A stretch of DNA of 64,000 bases, from positions 1 to 64,000 of IMG/VR virus record IMGVR_UViG_3300028558_000016. One strand, written 5' to 3'. Shown here piece by piece: positions 1,066-8,933 of the stretch. Both the position numbers and the translations under genes were made by a program. Under the pieces are notes generated by a model that was given only the letters and a program-made list of their open reading frames with translations, was not told the origin of the DNA and searched no databases. Numbering within the stretch: the stretch's first letter is position 1; each line of letters begins with the position of its first letter.

Positions 1066-2487
1066 TTAAACAATTACATTATAGCCTTTGATCAAATCGT
1101 TGTACAATTCTTTACCATCGAAATCCATCATGTATCTCTTAGAGCTTTTTGGACCTCCGATGAAATCAAAGAAGAACCCTTGGTGCTTCTTCAACTTTCT
1201 TTCTACAACAAATCTCATTACTTTTGCTGCCAACTTCTTTCTCAAGTTGGTCGCAGTTTCATCGCCTCTGTCGGAAGCACATTCTCTTATAGAAGATATT
1301 TCATCACGAGTGAATCCCAGCTTCTCAAAATCAACTGTGTCGATCTCAGCGATGTCTTTCACGTGAGTCAATCCAAGCTTAGCAAGAACATCTGCTCTCA
1401 AACCTCTCGATTCAAAAGTGATTGCATCCTTGTGCTTTCTGTATTCAATGAACTCCTCGTAAGTGGAAATTTCAGAAGTCAACTTGTCAATTTCTTTTAA
1501 AGTTCTCTTCCATCCTTCTTGCAAGTGTTCAATCTCTTCTCCTCTTCCTGGGAAAGTCGCCTTGTATTCGTTCACGTTGTCCTCACCAGATCTAACGATG
1601 TCGATCAATCTCCAGAACGCAGTTGAGTCCTTGAAGAAGTGGATTGCACAGTAAGCTGGATTCTTCATTTTTACACGAGGGTATCCAAACTCAGTATGCT
1701 TTCCATAATCACAAACAACATAACCTTCCTCACGGTAAGTCATGCCATCGAAAGACTCTTTCAATTTATCTGGAGAAGAATTCAATGCAAGAGTTGGAGC
1801 CATTGGCACACCAAGATCTTTTGATATAATCTCAAGATCAACGAAAGAAACTTCTTCCAAAGTATCAAGCTTTCTTGCACCCAACAAATAGACAGCACTG
1901 TCTTGGTGTGGTGTAACAACAATGTTGTACTTAGTACAAAGCTCAAACGCCAAAGTATATCCATCATATTTCTTAAACAAAGCTTTTACCCACTCAGTTC
2001 TAAGATCACAATGTTCCATCATTCTCACATCGTCATCTTCTCTCTTAACAGTCTCCATGAAAGCGTGAACGAACAAATCCGAGAATGTTCCTCCAAGCTT
2101 AGTATAGTGAAAGTTATCCACATCACCTTCTCCGTTAGCAGTTCCAGTTGTTCCGAAGCAAACTTCTCCTGTAACGTAATCAGTGTAAACGTGAATCATT
2201 GTTCCATCCATCTTTTTGAAGATCCTTGCAGACTCCCAGTTTATAGGTGCTGCGTGTCCTTCTCCAAGGTTGAAGAATTTTCTGAATGCAATGGACATAA
2301 CTCTCCAAGTATCTTTCTCAACTACAAGTCCTCTCGCATCTCTAACTTCCTCGTTAGTGAAGTTGGATTCGATAGAATCGTACTTAAGCAATACCTTGTG
2401 AGGATAGTCCTTGTGCTTCAATTTGAAGTCAGCAAGAGTCTTCTCAAGACCGTGCTCTTTTAGGTATTTTGTTATTGCGAGTTCCAT
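1066..2487 (-). CDS. rnl1: T4 Rnl1-like RNA ligase with C-terminal extension
   Basis: EVRDARGLVVE, AFRKFFNLGE, motif I KMDGT, AFEL, EEGYVV, RVKMK. Confidence 0.85.
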   Translation of the reverse strand: MELAITKYLKEHGLEKTLADFKLKHKDYPHKVLLKYDSIESNFTNEEVRDARGLVVEKDTWRVMSIAFRKFFNLGEGHAAPINWESARIFKKMDGTMIHVYTDYVTGEVCFGTTGTANGEGDVDNFHYTKLGGTFSDLFVHAFMETVKREDDDVRMMEHCDLRTEWVKALFKKYDGYTLAFELCTKYNIVVTPHQDSAVYLLGARKLDTLEEVSFVDLEIISKDLGVPMAPTLALNSSPDKLKESFDGMTYREEGYVVCDYGKHTEFGYPRVKMKNPAYCAIHFFKDSTAFWRLIDIVRSGEDNVNEYKATFPGRGEEIEHLQEGWKRTLKEIDKLTSEISTYEEFIEYRKHKDAITFESRGLRADVLAKLGLTHVKDIAEIDTVDFEKLGFTRDEISSIRECASDRGDETATNLRKKLAAKVMRFVVERKLKKHQGFFFDFIGGPKSSKRYMMDFDGKELYNDLIKGYNVIV

Positions 2488-2498
2488 TTCAAATATGA

Positions 2499-3023
2499 TT
2501 AGTAATGTTTACTTTTTCTTTTCTTTTTTCTACAAACAAGGTCAGCAGCGCAAGAAGCCGCGTAGGCATCTGGCTTTGATCTTACCCTGTATCCGGCAGC
2601 TCTTATGAATCCCATTCCAGAATCGTAAGCAATGTTGCTTTTCCATCTTGGATTTGGATTCAAGTCAAGGTCGATGTCAACAAGCTTCTCCATTGGAGAA
2701 ATTCTTGCATAAACCCCTTCAAGCTCCTTTTCAAGGTATTCGCCAACAGCGAAAGCTCGTTCAACTTCGCCCCAAAGCTTTGAATACATGTCCTTAGCTC
2801 TTGGAACGTTGTCAATACTGAAAATGTAGTGGGCACCTGCACCAACGTGGTATACAAGAACAACCGTTGCATAACGTGTCTTGTTTTTTTGATGCTCGGA
2901 GTCACATCCAACATAGATGCGGATTCCGTTTGGTGATGTGGACATGTGAGTCTTGATGTATTCCCTCATGTAGATACCGAGGTCATCAATGAATGCACCG
3001 CCAAATTTTTTAAAGTTTTTCAT
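2499..3023 (-). CDS. RNase H-like YkuK/DUF458 family protein
   Basis: IYVGCDS, GAGAHYIF, KLWGEV, DIDLDLN and KPDAYAASCAAD motifs. Confidence 0.8.
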   Translation of the reverse strand: MKNFKKFGGAFIDDLGIYMREYIKTHMSTSPNGIRIYVGCDSEHQKNKTRYATVVLVYHVGAGAHYIFSIDNVPRAKDMYSKLWGEVERAFAVGEYLEKELEGVYARISPMEKLVDIDLDLNPNPRWKSNIAYDSGMGFIRAAGYRVRSKPDAYAASCAADLVCRKKKRKSKHY

Positions 3024-3139
3024 TTTCGTTTCTCCTTTCTCTGTGTGTTTGTTTTAACAGCATAAAAGAGAGAAACACACGTCTCAAAATTATACCGGTT
3101 TTTATCGGTTTGTTTCTGAGAACGCGTTTGGAAACTAAT

Positions 3140-3337
3140 CTAATTCATTTCGAACCATCTTCGTTTAAACATTATTCTCAGCCTCGCGTAAGTACGAAGT
3201 CGCGACCATTTAAAATAGACGCTTTTTGTAGTCCTATTTGACCCTCGCGGGGAAACATGACCACATCTTTTTATTAGAATGTGTTCTGCACATTTTAAAT
3301 CTTCAAACTCCTTCATATTACAATCTTTAAAGTCCAT
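3140..3337 (-). CDS. Hypothetical protein
   Basis: 65 aa ORF co-oriented with neighbours; no motif recognised. Confidence 0.45.
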   Translation of the reverse strand: MDFKDCNMKEFEDLKCAEHILIKRCGHVSPRGSNRTTKSVYFKWSRLRTYARLRIMFKRRWFEMN

Positions 3338-3355
3338 TTAATATTATATATCATT

Positions 3356-3646
3356 TTAAAATAATCCATTCTCGAGTATGTCAACGTGTTTCTTCAAAAC
3401 ATCTCCGTGACAACTTGACGGTTTGCACCAACATCCTAAAGTTTTTCCTTTTAATTCTCCCAATCGATCCATCAGGTCTTTATTGTTCAAAAGGTATTCC
3501 TCGTATTTTTCAATTGCTTCCTTTCTCGAGGAAACCTTAAACTCAGCAAGAGTTCCCTCTTTATGAGAATAAGGATTTCCCCAAATGGAAGGACGTCCAA
3601 TATAGACGTCGTACTTATCTTTCTTACAGTGGACAACTTTACACAT
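3356..3646 (-). CDS. DUF4326 domain protein
   Basis: VVHCKK..DVYIGRPSIWGNPY...LKGKTLGCWCKP..CHGDVL. Confidence 0.85.
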   Translation of the reverse strand: MCKVVHCKKDKYDVYIGRPSIWGNPYSHKEGTLAEFKVSSRKEAIEKYEEYLLNNKDLMDRLGELKGKTLGCWCKPSSCHGDVLKKHVDILENGLF

Positions 3647-3657
3647 TAATTAATTTC

Positions 3658-4347
3658 TTATGCGTGCAGCTGTCTAATGTTTCCCTTGTACAACTCCTTG
3701 ATGGTTATTTTTCTTCCTGTTACGTGATCAAGAACAAAACCATCCTGTTCTCTGTAAGTTCTTCTCTTGTCGTTTCTGTTTCCATAACCGATTTGATTGA
3801 ACCTCGTCTCTTTCACCTTGGCACCTATCGCACCATCATTAATGTCCTTGAGCCTTTCTTCAAGTCGTGCCCAAGCAGTCTCTTCATTTTTTTCTCTGGT
3901 CCTGTGCTCTTCAACTCTCACTATCATTCCAGTTGGAATATGAGTCAACACGCAAACAGTTTCTACCTTGTTTCGGTTTTGACCGCCGTTACCAGATCCA
4001 CGAGTGTACTTTCGATGCACGTCGTTTCTATTTAAGACAAATTTTGGTTGGGAGTTTTCTTCCATTACAGCTACCGTCACGGTGCTGGTCTGTACTCTTC
4101 CTCTCTTTTCAGTTGGAGGAACTCTTTGCCATCTATGTCCGCCTGATTCGTTCTCAAAGAACTTCCTGACTCCGTTTCCAGTCAGTCATAGCGAGACATA
4201 ACCTGGCATTCAGTGTTCTACTGCAGAAGCAAATTGATTGATGCTTGCGGCCTTTTGATAAATGTCCGCCATTTCATTGACGAGGAGCTTTGCATCTTCT
4301 CCTCCTTCTGCTGCTCGAATTTCGAGCTTGATCTTTTCTGTTTTCAT
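3658..4347 (-). CDS. Short class I peptide chain release factor (RF1/PrfH-like, 229 aa) with two in-frame TGA codons (4210-4212, 4186-4188)
   Basis: Manual translation from ATG 4347: [22 protein letters not shown]...[52 protein letters not shown]...TRGSGNGGQNRNKVET. The RF motifs EIRAxxGG, ESGGHRxQRVP (PxT) and GGQ lie in one frame; the track ORF 3658..4080 is only the 3' part. Confidence 0.85.
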
Positions 4348-5370: not shown

Positions 5371-5374
5371 AAAT

Positions 5375-5457
5375 GAAACCGAGCTTTTATTTAGGGACTT
5401 AAGGCAGGTTGCTCTGCTCTGATATTTGCCCAGGAGAATCTTACTCCTATCGGTTTC
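5375..5457 (-). ncRNA. Candidate structured small RNA (element D) in the tRNA array
   Basis: 8-bp closing stem GAAACCGA/TCGGTTTC enclosing the hairpins TAGGAG/CTCCTG and GGCA/TGCC. Confidence 0.4.
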
Positions 5458-5547
5458 TCATGGCTTGTCGTCCTGAAACATTTTGTATACAAGCCAACCC
5501 ATCACAATAACTGCAATGACAATAACTATGTAACAAAATATATCCAT
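5458..5547 (-). CDS. 29-aa single-TM micropeptide
   Basis: Manual translation MDIFCYIVIVIAVIVMGWLVYKMFQDDKP*, lying between RNA genes. Confidence 0.45.
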   Translation of the reverse strand: MDIFCYIVIVIAVIVMGWLVYKMFQDDKP

Positions 5548-5548
5548 G

Positions 5549-5634
5549 TGCAGTAGGTGAGATTCGAACTCACAACCCCCTGATTGGAAGTCAGGTGCTC
5601 TATGCTTTCGCGTCCAATTAGGAGCTACTACTGC
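5549..5634 (-). tRNA. Atypical tRNA with TCC (Gly) anticodon, enlarged D-loop, Lys/Arg-like body
   Basis: GCAGTAG/CTACTGC acceptor with A73, 21-nt D-loop containing GC-GAAA-GC, anticodon arm CCTGA-CTTCCAA-TCAGG. Confidence 0.8.
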
Positions 5635-5660: not shown

Positions 5661-5720
5661 TGGAGCAACCTCAGTTAACTGATTCGCATTTCTGCGAGGG
5701 GGGAGTTAACCTCTGGTTGC
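5661..5720 (-). ncRNA. CCA-ended hairpin RNA (element A)
   Basis: GCAACC..GTTAAC..TCGCA-GAAA-TGCGA..GTTAAC..GGTTGC-T-CCA. Confidence 0.6.
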
Positions 5721-5725
5721 GTAAT

Positions 5726-5773
5726 TGGAGCCGAGGGGCCGTTCTCCAACGGTGAGTTCCCTTTCAACTCGGC
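5726..5773 (-). ncRNA. CCA-ended hairpin RNA (element B)
   Basis: GCCGAG..GGG..CCGTT-GGAG-AACGG-CCC-CTCGGC-T-CCA. Confidence 0.6.
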
Positions 5774-5778
5774 ATGTG

Positions 5779-5869
5779 CGGGGAAGATTGGAATCGAACC
5801 AATTAGTTTGATTTGCAGAAGACATTCTTTTTAAACAGAATGGTGCTCAGCCACCCGAGCATCTTCCCC
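5779..5869 (-). tRNA. Aberrant tRNA (Cys GCA-like remnant) with inserted hairpin; possible pseudo-tRNA
   Basis: GGGGAAG/CTTCCCC acceptor, GCTC/GAGC D-stem, ATTGG-TTCGATT-CCAAT T-arm. The central region has a CATTCT/AGAATG hairpin followed by CT-GCA-AA-TCAAA-CTA. Confidence 0.6.
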
Positions 5870-6518: not shown

Positions 6519-6592
6519 TGGGGCCAGGATCGAACTCGCGTCCGACGAATGGAAGCTAATGAGGCCATCCAAACCGCTCATTATCGCCTGGC
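6519..6592 (-). ncRNA. 74-nt CCA-ended tRNA-like RNA lacking canonical arms (element E)
   Basis: GCCAGG/CCTGGC-C-CCA closing, TAATGAG/CTCATTA hairpin, GAGTTCGATC T-loop-like motif without a T-stem. Confidence 0.55.
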
Positions 6593-6973: not shown

Positions 6974-6974
6974 G

Positions 6975-7059
6975 TAGCGCTGGTGAGACTCGAACTCACA
7001 CTACCGTTAAGGAACCCGCTTATGAGGCGGGCACAATTACCACATCTGTTCACAGCGCT
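6975..7059 (-). tRNA. tRNA with CAT anticodon on a class II (long variable arm) scaffold
   Basis: AGCGCTG/CAGCGCT, A73, CCCGC-CTCATAA-GCGGG, 15-nt variable region, GTGAG-TTCGAGT-CTCAC. Confidence 0.85.
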
Positions 7060-7372: not shown

Positions 7373-7464
7373 TGGTGCGCCCGGAGGGATTCGAACCCCC
7401 GTTGGTGTTATTCACACGTCTGATTAAAAGTCAGGACCATTCGGCCAGCTATGGGAACGGACGC
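7373..7464 (-). tRNA. tRNA with TTT (Lys) anticodon and long variable arm
   Basis: GCGTCCG/CGGGCGC-A-CCA, CTGA-CTTTTAA-TCAG, V-arm GTGT-GAATA-ACAC, GGGGG-TTCGAAT-CCCTC. Confidence 0.85.
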
Positions 7465-7774: not shown

Positions 7775-7880
7775 TGGCAAAGATTGGATTCGAACCAATG
7801 ACCTCTCGTTTACTTTCCTTAACAATGTTTCCATTGACGGGGATTTCAGGCGAGCGCTCTACCAACTGAGCTACTTATCC
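7775..7880 (-). tRNA. tRNA-Phe(GAA) with a 33-nt insertion after position 37 (intron-like)
   Basis: Standard D- and T-arms. Anticodon arm CTCG-C-CT-GAA-A-[33 nt including CAATG-GAAA-CATTG]-A-A-CGAG; the acceptor stem has two mismatches. Confidence 0.7.
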
Positions 7881-7908: not shown

Positions 7909-7981
7909 AGCCGAGAACCGGGGTCGAACCGGTGACCTTCCGCTTACAAGGCGGGTGCTCTACCAACTGAGCTATCTCGGC
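7909..7981 (-). tRNA. tRNA-Thr(TGT)
   Basis: GCCGAGA/TCTCGGC, CCCGC-CTTGTAA-GCGGA. Confidence 0.95.
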
Positions 7982-8782: not shown

Positions 8783-8814
8783 CAAAAAAAATCCCAAACG
8801 TTTGGTTTGGGATT
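8783..8814 (-). terminator. Intrinsic terminator of the leader (attenuator)
   Basis: AATCCCAAAC-CAAAC-GTTTGGGATT 10-bp stem running into a U8 tract (the first two U also close the stem). Confidence 0.9.
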
Positions 8815-8837
8815 CGTAATTTCGTTATTAGTTAACG

Positions 8838-8933
8838 TCATTCGCACATCCCAAAACACATAGGCTTACCTTTCCCAGTTTTCGTGGTAGTAGTTGTACC
8901 TGTAGTTATTTTGAATATTTGTTGCGAATTCAT
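8838..8933 (-). CDS. Attenuator leader peptide (31 aa; Thr/Gly/Lys/Met/Cys/Phe-rich)
   Basis: ATG 8933 gives MNSQQIFKITTGTTTTTKTGKGKPMCFGMCE-TGA. It has 8 Thr codons using all four ACN; TTTGGGAT in codons 27-29 is complementary to ATCCCAAA in the terminator 5' arm. Confidence 0.8.
   Translation of the reverse strand: MNSQQIFKITTGTTTTTKTGKGKPMCFGMCE

What the first reader, a model, noticed from the sequence alone, without database searches (positions are those of the whole stretch)
5726..5773. CCA-ended hairpin RNA B carries a tRNA-Thr acceptor end
Seen: the 48-nt GCCGAG...CCGTT-GGAG-AACGG...CTCGGC-T-CCA lies directly upstream of element A on the minus strand. Its six terminal pairs and U discriminator are identical to the tRNA-Thr(TGT) at 7909-7981 (GCCGAG/CTCGGC-T). 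Inference: a Thr-acceptor mimic, notable given the Thr-dominated leader.
Basis: partly seen in the sequence, partly recalled or inferred. Interest (0 to 1): 0.72.

Follow-up and report, generated by a model that had tools for sequence, protein, structure and literature searches.

The report
Conserved CCA-ended tRNA-arm mimic RNA
A 48-base hairpin ending in the tRNA tail CCA is a real, single-copy RNA gene, nearly unchanged in the tRNA gene arrays of about ten lineages of very large phages; it imitates the amino-acid-accepting arm of a tRNA, travels with glycine tRNA genes rather than threonine ones, and its job is unknown.

Summary
On the minus strand, 5773..5726 is GCCGAG-UUGAAA-GGG-AACUCA-CCGUU-GGAG-AACGG-CCC-CUCGGC-U-CCA. 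Its six end pairs and U discriminator equal those of tRNA-Thr(UGU) at 7981..7909.

On its own the fold is unremarkable (z -1.1). Comparison shows a conserved RNA. I found it in about ten phage lineages (129-642 kb records), one copy in each of the six large records searched whole. All 14 pairs are kept, three of them through compensatory double changes. In the seven 48-nt variants the two bulges and the GGAG loop do not vary. CCA is always encoded, although 51 of 55 tRNAs of this phage lack it. The two bases before G1 are always AU, the commonest 5' flank of this phage's tRNAs. In four lineages the next tRNA starts one base after CCA.

So it is built and spaced like a tRNA gene but is only an acceptor-arm minihelix. 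It is absent from Rfam, 185,579 bacterial and archaeal genomes and the T4 tRNA region.

The threonine reading does not hold. tRNA-Thr acceptor stems differ in three other records while B's stem stays fixed, and the nearest tRNA is glycine in 8 of 9 contexts.

Function and expression are untested. I favour a trans-acting acceptor-end mimic.

The parts
5726..5773 (-). Hairpin B, a 48-nt CCA-ended minihelix RNA gene (the finding)
   Evidence: Sequence; fold; family alignment and covariation; CM R1 scores 80.4 bits here and this is the only hit in the 482-kb genome.
5768..5773 (-). 5' strand of the terminal (acceptor-like) stem, GCCGAG; pairs with 5730-5735
   Evidence: 6 bp kept in all homologues. 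Pair 4 is G-C or A-U (compensatory, in L031 and L032). L026 also starts GCCAAG, but the contig ends before the 3' strand.
5762..5767 (-). Bulge 1, UUGAAA, on the 5' strand only
   Evidence: Unchanged in the 8 aligned sequences. Shortened to U-AA only in LR756502.1.
5759..5761 (-). GGG, predicted to pair with CCC at 5736-5738
   Evidence: Invariant, so there is no covariation for or against this helix. It is still predicted in the 3-nt-shorter G002 variant.
5753..5758 (-). Bulge 2, AACUCA
   Evidence: Invariant in every homologue, including LR756502.1.
5739..5752 (-). Apical 5-bp stem (CCGUU/AACGG) with GGAG tetraloop
   Evidence: Pair 2 is seen as C-G, A-U and U-A, plus G-C in LR756502.1. Pair 5 is seen as U-A, G-C and C-G. 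The loop GGAG is invariant.
5730..5738 (-). CCC plus the 3' strand of the terminal stem, CUCGGC. With 5739-5743 this makes one unbroken 14-nt 3' strand
5726..5729 (-). Discriminator U and encoded CCA
   Evidence: CCA is invariant in all lineages while the bases after it differ (AUUA.., or a single U followed by the next tRNA, or AUAAUG). N73 is U in all but G002, where it is A. Only 4 of the 55 tRNAs of this genome encode CCA.
5774..5775 (-). The -2 and -1 bases, A and U, before G1 (tRNA-type 5' flank)
   Evidence: AU precedes G1 in all ten contexts. In G000, 37 of 55 tRNAs have U at -1 and 24 of 55 have AU, against 30% T in the genome.
5661..5720 (-). Hairpin A, the neighbouring 60-nt U-CCA hairpin (context, not part of the B family)
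   Evidence: Fold z -4.8. Kept in L024. In G001 the base is kept but it ends CCU plus a U-run. In L018-type phages another hairpin takes its place.
5549..5634 (-). tRNA-Gly(UCC)-like gene with an enlarged D-loop, the next tRNA downstream of B
   Evidence: Rfam tRNA, 31.8 bits. The T-stem shows compensatory changes in G001 and L018.
5778..5869 (-). Unusual 92-nt tRNA directly upstream of B (context)
   Evidence: ARAGORN and fold. Present only in the G000, L024 and L026 type.
7909..7981 (-). tRNA-Thr(UGU), whose acceptor end equals B's in this genome

Best explanation
B is a gene for a small tRNA-mimicking RNA. It is an acceptor-arm minihelix that huge phages carry as one unit of their tRNA arrays.

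Shown: it is a conserved RNA whose helices are under selection. It occurs once in each of the six large records searched whole. It has an invariant encoded N73-CCA end, the tRNA-type AU|G 5' flank and tRNA-like spacing. It is linked to tRNA-Gly genes inside islands of tRNA and RNA-repair genes.

Inferred: it is transcribed with the array. RNase P cuts before G1. The 3' end is made by cleavage at the next tRNA's 5' end, or in the AU-rich trailer, followed by exonuclease trimming back to CCA. The CCA is encoded because a CCA end blocks RNase Z, the enzyme that probably matures the CCA-less tRNAs of the array.

More speculative: the free 48-nt RNA acts in trans. It presents a Gly/Thr-type acceptor end (G1:C72, C2:G71, U73, CCA) and two invariant bulges to a protein of the tRNA-handling or tRNA-attacking machinery, as a decoy, competitor or cofactor. 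It has no anticodon arm, so it is not a decoding tRNA.
For: Conservation and structure
- Homologues occur in G000; in L024 and L026; in L018-L023; in L028; in G002-G006; and in LR756502.1.
- All 14 pairs are kept in 7 distinct sequences. Three pairs show double changes, and two of those have three pair types. None of 500 shuffles reaches the covariation score. Sliding the partners drops pairing to 39-55%.
- In the seven 48-nt variants every substitution falls in a stem and is compensated; bulges and loop never change. G002 and LR756502.1 also differ by short indels, G:U pairs or the discriminator.
- B is 96% identical between G000 and the L018 type. The adjacent ORF is 86% identical and real tRNAs 89-95%.
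- The same B occurs in phages where no homologue of G000's portal or clamp loader was detected (G002-G005). LR756502.1, whose proteins are only 37-38% identical, has a diverged copy.
- There is one copy in each of the six large records searched whole.

tRNA-like gene layout
- AU comes before G1 in 10 of 10 contexts.
- CCA is invariant although the downstream sequence varies.
- In L028, G002, G004 and G005 the next tRNA starts one base after CCA.
- 51 of 55 tRNAs lack encoded CCA, and the phage has its own CCA-adding enzyme.

Context
- B sits in tRNA arrays beside RNA ligases, a P-loop protein, DUF4326 and an RF-1-domain protein. This is the kind of counter-defence island described for jumbo phages (PMC7824862).

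Not a known family
- No Rfam hit at E<=5 and no ARAGORN call.
Against: - There is no direct evidence of a discrete transcript. The one RNA run with related contigs covers the neighbouring tRNA-Gly-like gene, half of hairpin A and the upstream ORF, but not B. It may also contain DNA.
- The single-sequence fold is not unusual (z -1.1).
- B is dispensable in some close relatives: it is absent from G001 and L025.
- The apical loop is a tetraloop, not a T-loop, and the helix is 14 bp with two bulges rather than the 12 bp of a tRNA. Recognition by RNase P, synthetases or EF-Tu is therefore not guaranteed.
- The G002 copy has A73 and a rebuilt apical part.
- The trans-acting role is inference only. 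No partner protein was identified.
Confidence: 0.6

Rival explanations
1. A cis-acting processing or stability element of the array. B would be a structured spacer that gives RNase P or RNase E a defined cut site. It would insulate the next tRNA (usually tRNA-Gly) from misfolding with upstream RNA, or cap the 3' end of the upstream mRNA. It would have no life of its own.
For: B almost always sits directly upstream of a tRNA, often 1 nt away, and sometimes directly after an ORF (L018, L028, G006). Other non-tRNA hairpins occupy equivalent slots: hairpin A, and the replacement hairpin in L018.
Against: A mere spacer needs no invariant bulges, no invariant GGAG loop and no invariant CCA across distant phages. 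Other hairpins in these slots (A) are replaced freely, while B is not. B is kept whatever lies upstream (tRNA, ORF or homing-endonuclease gene) and also when it lies downstream of tRNA-Gly (G003).
Confidence: 0.2
2. One reading: a threonine-specific acceptor mimic that host or phage ThrRS recognises or charges, linked to the Thr-rich leader.
For: In G000 the six end pairs and U73 equal tRNA-Thr(UGU), and five of six pairs equal tRNA-Thr(CGU). All three Thr tRNAs share G1, C2, C3 and U73. A Thr/Gly/Lys-rich leader peptide precedes the array.
Against: tRNA-Thr(UGU) acceptors in G001 (no B) and in the B-carrying G002 and G003 are different, while B's stem is fixed. tRNA-Leu(CAA) has the same 5' octamer. 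B's neighbours are Gly tRNAs, not Thr tRNAs. Thr identity depends on anticodon bases as well as acceptor pairs, and B lacks an anticodon (PMC9976931).
Confidence: 0.07
3. A decaying remnant of a tRNA gene (an internally deleted tRNA-Thr copy), or a chance hairpin, with no function.
For: The fold is not unusual for its composition. N-CCA hairpins are not enriched genome-wide. The 27 nt from UCACCG to the discriminator align without gaps to tRNA-Thr(UGU) at 16 of 27 positions (read). B is absent from two relatives.
Against: A pseudogene would not stay 92-100% identical across distant phages with only compensated changes, be single-copy in each genome searched, and keep CCA and its flank.
Confidence: 0.03
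4. A DNA-level site, such as a homing-endonuclease target, a recombination site or a protein-binding palindrome, rather than an RNA.
For: GIY-YIG homing-endonuclease genes sit in these arrays, one directly upstream of B in L028. B's distribution across phages suggests horizontal movement.
Against: Sequence-specific DNA sites do not evolve by compensatory changes that preserve pairing. The orientation always matches the tRNAs. The asymmetric bulges and CCA tail are not palindromic.
Confidence: 0.05

Closest known systems
Phage T4 small stable RNAs, species 1 and 2 (rnaC, rnaD)
   Same: They are non-tRNA RNAs encoded inside a phage tRNA cluster beside a GIY-YIG homing-endonuclease gene (segB) (annotation). 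From my own knowledge they are co-transcribed and processed with the tRNAs and their function is still unknown. rnaC contains a T-arm-like hairpin.
   Different: They are 139 and 119 nt, not 48. They have no sequence or model similarity: R1 finds nothing in the T4 region. B is a bare acceptor-type helix with encoded CCA and no T-loop.
Synthetic tRNA minihelices and microhelices (acceptor/T-arm hairpins used in synthetase studies)
   Same: A single hairpin ending in N73-CCA that carries acceptor-stem identity pairs. Such RNAs can be charged by several synthetases, for example Ala, His and Cys (PMC9976931). From my own knowledge they are also substrates of RNase P and the CCA-adding enzyme.
   Different: Those are laboratory constructs with 12 bp and a T-loop. 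B is a natural, conserved gene with 14 bp, two invariant 6-nt bulges on the 5' strand and a GGAG tetraloop.
Natural hairpin substrates of RNase P: the 4.5S RNA precursor and phage phi80 M3 RNA (from my own knowledge, not tested here)
   Same: Hairpin RNAs with a 3' CCA-type tail that RNase P matures. One of them is phage-encoded and of unknown function.
   Different: No sequence relation is known. B's place in tRNA arrays, its Gly linkage and its conserved bulges have no counterpart. No comparison was run here.
tRNA-like structures of plant RNA viruses, and mascRNA-type tRNA-like RNAs
   Same: Viral or cellular RNAs that mimic tRNA closely enough to be handled by tRNA enzymes (CCA addition, charging, RNase P/Z) (abstracts listed).
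   Different: Those mimic the whole L-shape and are the 3' ends of genomes or lncRNAs. B mimics at most the acceptor arm, is a free-standing gene in a DNA phage, and gets no Rfam hit to these families.
Y RNA/YrlA with Ro-type (TROVE) proteins
   Same: A tRNA-like RNA partner in an RNA-repair setting, reported for some jumbo phages (PMC7824862). G000 has two other A-CCA hairpins right after a DUF2828+DUF7788 gene.
   Different: B is not next to such a gene and has no Y-RNA features. The link is context only.

Membership tests
Canonical tRNA (Rfam RF00005) | Cloverleaf with D, anticodon and T arms, detectable by ARAGORN or the Rfam tRNA model | tested here: not met
   No ARAGORN call and no Rfam match at E<=5 over 5726-5773. 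B is 48 nt with a single helix axis.
tRNA acceptor-arm minihelix (works-like class) | A terminal helix starting G1:C72, followed by one unpaired discriminator and CCA at the 3' end | tested here: met
   GCCGAG/CUCGGC-U-CCA. CCA is invariant in all lineages and N73 stays unpaired.
tRNA acceptor-arm minihelix (works-like class) | About 12 bp of coaxial acceptor and T stem, capped by a T-loop (UUCRANY) | tested here: not met
   14 bp interrupted by two 5'-strand bulges and capped by GGAG.
tRNA acceptor-arm minihelix (works-like class) | [quoted passage not shown] | not testable with these tools
   Only indirect support: the AU|G flank as in the phage's tRNAs and tRNA-like spacing.
Threonine acceptor mimic | The acceptor stem follows that of the resident tRNA-Thr in each genome | tested here: not met
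   It matches in G000 only. The tRNA-Thr(UGU) acceptors of G001, G002 and G003 differ while B's stem is fixed.
Threonine acceptor mimic | Carries the Thr identity set (acceptor pairs plus anticodon bases) | tested here: not met
   G1:C72 and C2:G71 are present, but B has no anticodon arm (identity rules from PMC9976931).
Glycine-type acceptor end | U73, G1:C72 and C2:G71, the acceptor-side glycine determinants in bacteria. U73 with G71 is also the TacT identity pair | tested here: met
   Present in every copy but G002, which has A73, and LR756502.1, which has U2:G71 (rules from PMC9976931). In this phage the Thr tRNAs share these bases, so the set is not exclusive.
Glycine-type acceptor end | Charged by GlyRS | not testable with these tools
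The anticodon determinants C35 and C36 are absent.
T4 species 1/2 stable RNAs | Sequence or structure homology to rnaC or rnaD | tested here: not met
   CM R1 finds no match in the T4 tRNA region at E<=1. The sizes and folds differ.
Intrinsic terminator | A GC-rich hairpin followed directly by a U-run | tested here: not met
   No U-run follows B in any lineage.
tmRNA tRNA-like domain | An Ala-type G3:U70 acceptor, a T-arm and a tag reading frame | tested here: not met
   ARAGORN finds no tmRNA. B has C3:G70.

The most novel reading that the evidence does not exclude
B is a natural, free-standing acceptor-arm RNA that is really used through its CCA end. Either it is charged (most plausibly with glycine, through G1:C72, C2:G71 and U73), or it is bound as an uncharged end. 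It would then serve huge phages as a decoy or sponge against host systems that attack or read tRNA acceptor ends. Examples are GNAT toxins of the TacT type, which key on U73 and G71, and nucleotidyltransferase toxins of the MenT/AbiEii type. Alternatively it could be a cofactor of the phage's own tRNA-repair and ribosome-rescue island. That would be the first natural minihelix RNA with a biological role.
Probability: 0.2. Interest if true: 0.88.

Novelty: new variant of a known kind. Interest (0 to 1): 0.7.

Why it matters
Minihelices, meaning acceptor arms without the rest of the tRNA, have been laboratory tools and evolutionary thought experiments for decades. They are proposed as the ancestral half of tRNA. 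Here a natural one appears as a conserved gene.

It is kept almost letter for letter in phages whose proteins are barely or not detectably related. This implies a strongly constrained interaction, probably with a conserved cellular or defence component.

It adds a new kind of element to the translation and RNA-repair islands of huge phages, and a concrete 48-nt object to test. It also gives a modern, tractable parallel to the T4 species 1 and 2 RNAs, whose function has been unknown for some fifty years. If it neutralises acceptor-end-directed toxins, it would be a new class of RNA-based counter-defence.

Tried and rejected
- An exact 27-mer of B in IMG/VR gave nothing.
- A scan of JGI metagenomes with the neighbouring tRNA-like 24-mer returned only G000 and G001.
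- Rfam at E<=5 gave nothing on B.
- Genome-wide enrichment of stable hairpins followed by N-CCA was not significant: 9, against a median of 5 for other triplets. No claim is made that G000 has a general class of CCA hairpins.
- Does B follow tRNA-Thr? No.
- Two pattern scans of 185,579 bacterial and archaeal genomes found no B.
- The collection of GenBank phage records gave only one uncultured 642-kb phage.
- A degenerate core pattern found no further IMG/VR members.
- The T4 rnaC/rnaD region has no model match.
- Expression: the only RNA run with related contigs does not cover B and may hold DNA. This is inconclusive.
- Pairing of B's tail UCCAAUUA with UAAUUGGA in the D-loop insert of the downstream tRNA-Gly-like gene is perfect in G000 but broken in L018 and G001. 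Rejected as chance around the palindrome CCAATTGG.
- B's GAACUCA is complementary to UGAGUUC in some T-arms, but not in those of G002, G004 or L028. Rejected.
- A loop-bulge pseudoknot (CUC with GAG) is sterically implausible in the 48-nt form. That pairing appears only in the rearranged G002 copy.
- No structure or complex prediction was run.

Full report
SETTING. The window is the first 64 kb of a 482,156-bp virus record from a rhizosphere metagenome. It is about 36% G+C, and genes are densely packed on the minus strand under the standard code. Typical phage replication and head genes are present. ARAGORN finds 55 tRNA genes in the record, grouped by amino acid. The array at 5.3-8.6 kb holds Thr, Gly, Lys and Met tRNAs plus several odd tRNA-like genes. 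Downstream lie an Rnl1-type RNA ligase, a PF04308 protein, DUF4326 and an RF-1-domain protein. This is the kind of tRNA, RNA-repair and ribosome-rescue island described for jumbo phages (PMC7824862).

THE OBSERVATION. The minus strand 5773..5726 reads GCCGAG UUGAAA GGG AACUCA CCGUU GGAG AACGG CCC CUCGGC U CCA. RNAfold gives the expected hairpin at -17.3 kcal/mol. All unpaired bases lie on the 5' strand and the 3' strand is an unbroken 14 nt. Five bases further on is hairpin A (5720..5661), which also ends U-CCA.

Taken alone, however, it is not beyond chance:
- The fold z-score is -1.09.
- Stable hairpins followed by N-CCA are no commoner in the genome than hairpins followed by other triplets.
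- GCCGAG is also the start of tRNA-Leu(CAA), whose first eight bases equal B's.

RELATIVES. Direct scans at first found only one relative, G001. It is a 28.8-kb fragment whose RNA ligase is 71% identical. Its array is syntenic, but B, the odd tRNA and the upstream small ORF are missing. A Logan contig from a watershed metagenome covers B with no listed change inside it, but 5 of its 13 substitutions were not displayed.

The breakthrough came from the small ORF upstream of B. Its homologues led to ten short contigs (L018-L027). Seven of these carry a complete B, and L026 carries a copy cut off by the contig end. Pattern scans built from the conserved bulge then found B in six IMG/VR contigs: L028 and the records G002-G006, of 33 to 372 kb. 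BLAST found a diverged copy in the 642-kb uncultured phage LR756502.1. None was found in 185,579 bacterial and archaeal genomes. A covariance model (R1) finds exactly one copy in each of G000 and G002-G006, at 67-81 bits, and scores the LR756502.1 copy at 52 bits.

STRUCTURE IS UNDER SELECTION. In eight aligned copies (seven distinct), all 14 predicted pairs form in every sequence.
- Pair 4 of the terminal stem is G-C or A-U.
- Pair 2 of the apical stem is C-G, A-U or U-A, and G-C in LR756502.1.
- Pair 5 is U-A, G-C or C-G.

None of 500 column shuffles reaches the observed covariation score or percentage paired. Sliding the 3' partners by 1-3 columns drops pairing to 39-55%. In the seven 48-nt variants every substitution lies in a stem and is compensated. 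The bulges UUGAAA and AACUCA, the GGG/CCC block and the GGAG loop never change. The middle helix, GGG with CCC, is therefore untested.

Between G000 and the L018-type phage, B is 96% identical. The adjacent ORF is 86% identical, the tRNA-Gly-like gene 89% and tRNA-Thr(CGU) 95%. The phages carrying B are far apart. LR756502.1 shares a portal and a clamp loader with G000 at only 37-38% identity. No homologue of either protein was detected in G002-G005, although some genes near B in those phages match G000 at 33-57%. G006 belongs to G000's own clade.

Two copies depart from the norm. G002 lacks three bases, has A73 and is predicted to close its top with CUC/GAG instead. LR756502.1 has a shorter first bulge and two G-U pairs in the end stem.

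IT IS LAID OUT LIKE A tRNA GENE. In all ten contexts the two bases before G1 are AU, although the sequence further upstream is unrelated. In G000, 37 of 55 tRNAs have U at -1 and 24 have AU. From general knowledge, U at -1 is the base bacterial RNase P prefers.

CCA is invariant while what follows varies. It is AUUA.. in G000, L018, G003 and G006. It is a single U followed directly by the 5' end of the next tRNA in L028, G002, G004 and G005. It is AUAAUG in LR756502.1. By contrast, 51 of G000's 55 tRNAs lack CCA and end N73-CA, and the phage encodes a CCA-adding enzyme.

A consistent reading is this. The CCA-less tRNAs are matured by RNase Z and CCA addition. From general knowledge, a CCA end blocks RNase Z. 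B therefore carries its CCA in the DNA, is released by RNase P cuts on both sides (its own 5' end and that of the next tRNA), and is trimmed back to CCA. These processing steps are inferred, not shown.

THREONINE OR GLYCINE? The Thr reading fails the comparative test.
- tRNA-Thr(UGU) has the acceptor GCCUUAG in G001, GCUGGUG in G003, and GUUCUCA or GCUUCAU in G002. B's stem stays GCCRAG.
- What does travel with B is tRNA-Gly. It is the nearest tRNA in 8 of 9 contexts.
- It lies downstream of B in G000 (after hairpin A), L018, L028, G002, G004 and LR756502.1. It lies upstream in G003 and on both sides in G005. Only G006 has ORFs on both sides.
- These contexts are not independent, but the link survives several rearrangements.
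- B's G1:C72, C2:G71 and U73 are the acceptor-side glycine determinants in bacteria. U73 plus G71 is also the identity pair read by the glycyl-tRNA-acetylating toxin TacT. Threonine identity also depends on anticodon bases, which B lacks (PMC9976931).
- In this phage the Thr tRNAs share those same three features, so the end is best called Gly/Thr-type.
- The discriminators of B and of the resident Gly tRNAs do not follow each other either: G002 has B with A73 and Gly with U73, and G003 has B with U73 and Gly(UCC) with A73.

WHAT IT MOST LIKELY IS. It is a conserved gene for a 48-nt RNA that mimics a tRNA acceptor arm and is handled by the tRNA-processing machinery.
- A spacer, cap or cut site would not need invariant bulges, loop and CCA across such distant phages, and neighbouring hairpins such as A are replaced freely. 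I therefore favour a trans-acting product over a purely cis element (about 0.6 against 0.2).
- A pseudogene, a chance hairpin or a DNA-level site does not fit the compensatory changes and the single-copy conservation.
- Its target is unknown. The invariant single-stranded bases point to a specific partner, and the context points to tRNA repair, ribosome rescue or defence against tRNA-directed host systems.
- No transcript evidence could be obtained. The only RNA run with related contigs covers the neighbouring tRNA-Gly-like gene, the 3' part of hairpin A and the upstream ORF, but not B.

COMPARISON WITH WHAT IS KNOWN. The nearest precedents are the T4 species 1 and 2 RNAs. They sit in the same kind of place, but they are larger, unrelated in sequence, and give no model match. 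Others are the synthetic minihelices of synthetase biochemistry (PMC9976931), the hairpin substrates of RNase P such as the 4.5S precursor and phi80 M3 RNA (my own knowledge), viral tRNA-like structures, and Y RNA partners of Ro-type proteins.

B is not a member of any of these families. It works like a minihelix in layout but fails the T-loop and 12-bp criterion. Full-text searches found no description of such an element. I rate it a new variant of a known kind, namely tRNA-mimicking small RNAs.

Noticed in passing
window 8838-8933 (-) and 8789-8815 (-): A 31-codon leader ORF, MNSQQIFKITTGTTTTTKTGKGKPMCFGMCE, is followed by an intrinsic terminator (CCCAAAC..GUUUGGG plus U8) just upstream of the Met/Thr/Lys/Gly tRNA array. 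G001 keeps both (MISQLITKIITTVSTTKTGGKGKTMCSGIRE). It looks like an amino-acid-operon-style attenuator placed in front of tRNA genes for the same amino acids.
   Followed up: partly
window 5778-5869 (-): A 92-nt tRNA with a 9-bp acceptor, a 6-bp D stem with a 4-nt loop, a 6-bp anticodon stem, a long variable arm and a 4-bp T stem. This is the tRNA-Sec or allo-tRNA shape (Rfam tRNA-Sec 23.5 bits, below threshold). The loop is the 8-nt GUUUAAAA here and in L026, but the 7-nt GUUUAAA (anticodon UUA) in L024; the watershed contig (X6) lacks one base at 5828, in the loop's A-run. It is present only in the closest relatives.
   Followed up: partly
window 5661-5720 (-): Hairpin A: 60 nt, GCAACC/GGUUGC end stem, GAAA loop, U-CCA end, fold z -4.8. 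It is kept in L024. In G001 only the lower stems are kept, the top is replaced, and the end is CCU plus a U-run. In L018-type phages an unrelated hairpin takes its place.
   Followed up: partly
window 6519-6592 (-): Element C: a 74-nt RNA-like element, GCCAGG..CCUGGC-C-CCA, with two inner hairpins. It is missed by ARAGORN and Rfam. It is conserved in G001 and L018 with its CCA end and a compensatory change in the 5-bp stem.
   Followed up: partly
window 5549-5634 (-): A tRNA-Gly(UCC)-like gene with a D-loop enlarged by about 12 nt. It is 89-95% conserved in relatives, with compensatory T-stem changes. G001 and L018 encode its CCA, and G000 does not.
   Followed up: partly
window 5371-5457 (-): The 87-nt spacer before tRNA-Thr(CGU) is 98-99% identical in L024 and L025, although nearby genes have diverged. 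It folds with an 8-bp closing stem (z -2.4). It may be another structured RNA.
   Followed up: partly
G000 78046-78153 (-), outside the window (L012 3046-3154): Two tandem hairpins, GGGGAAGG..CCUUCCCC-A-CCA and GGGGAAU..AUUCCCC-A-CCA, each followed by AUUG. They sit between a 486-aa DUF2828+DUF7788 gene and a terminator. This might be a Y-RNA-like pairing of protein and RNA. The second hairpin folds weakly.
   Followed up: partly
whole record G000: 51 of 55 tRNA genes lack encoded CCA, and most end N73-CA. A CCA-adding enzyme gene lies at 307.4 kb. The tRNAs are sorted into arrays by amino acid, with class II synthetase-like genes beside the Pro/Phe/Val and His arrays. There are three tRNA(CUA) genes at 358, 368 and 374 kb.
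   Followed up: partly
window 7373-7464 (-), 7775-7880 (-), 6974-7059 (-): Several tRNAs occur as a normal copy plus a longer copy with an insertion: a 92-nt Lys(UUU) with encoded CCA, a 106-nt tRNA with about 35 extra nt in the anticodon loop and two acceptor mismatches, and an 86-nt Met. The same pattern is seen in other arrays of the record.
   Followed up: no
window 1066-4080 (-); L047-L050: An RNA-repair and rescue island lies beside the array: Rnl1-type ligase (1066-2487), PF04308 RNase H-like (2499-3023), DUF4326 (3356-3646) and an RF-1-domain protein (3658-4080). In G002, G004 and G005, B lies within 0.2-8 kb of an Rnl2-type ligase, and in G004 and G005 also of an AAA_28 P-loop protein. 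DUF4326 lies near B in G005.
   Followed up: partly
L028 8395-8434; L046 1546-1583: A shared motif, GAAAACAUUAAACCCGUCCARCCAGACGUAAAAUC, sits directly upstream of a tRNA-Gly gene in two different phages.
   Followed up: no
L002 5906-6520; L028 7386-8025: GIY-YIG homing-endonuclease-like ORFs are inserted in the tRNA arrays of relatives, as segB is in T4. One lies directly upstream of B in L028.
   Followed up: no
window 5458-5547 (-): A 29-codon hydrophobic ORF (MDIFCYIVIVIAVIVMGWLVYKMFQDDKP) lies between the tRNA-Gly-like gene and tRNA-Thr(CGU). Small hydrophobic ORFs occupy the same slot in G001, L018 and L024.
   Followed up: no
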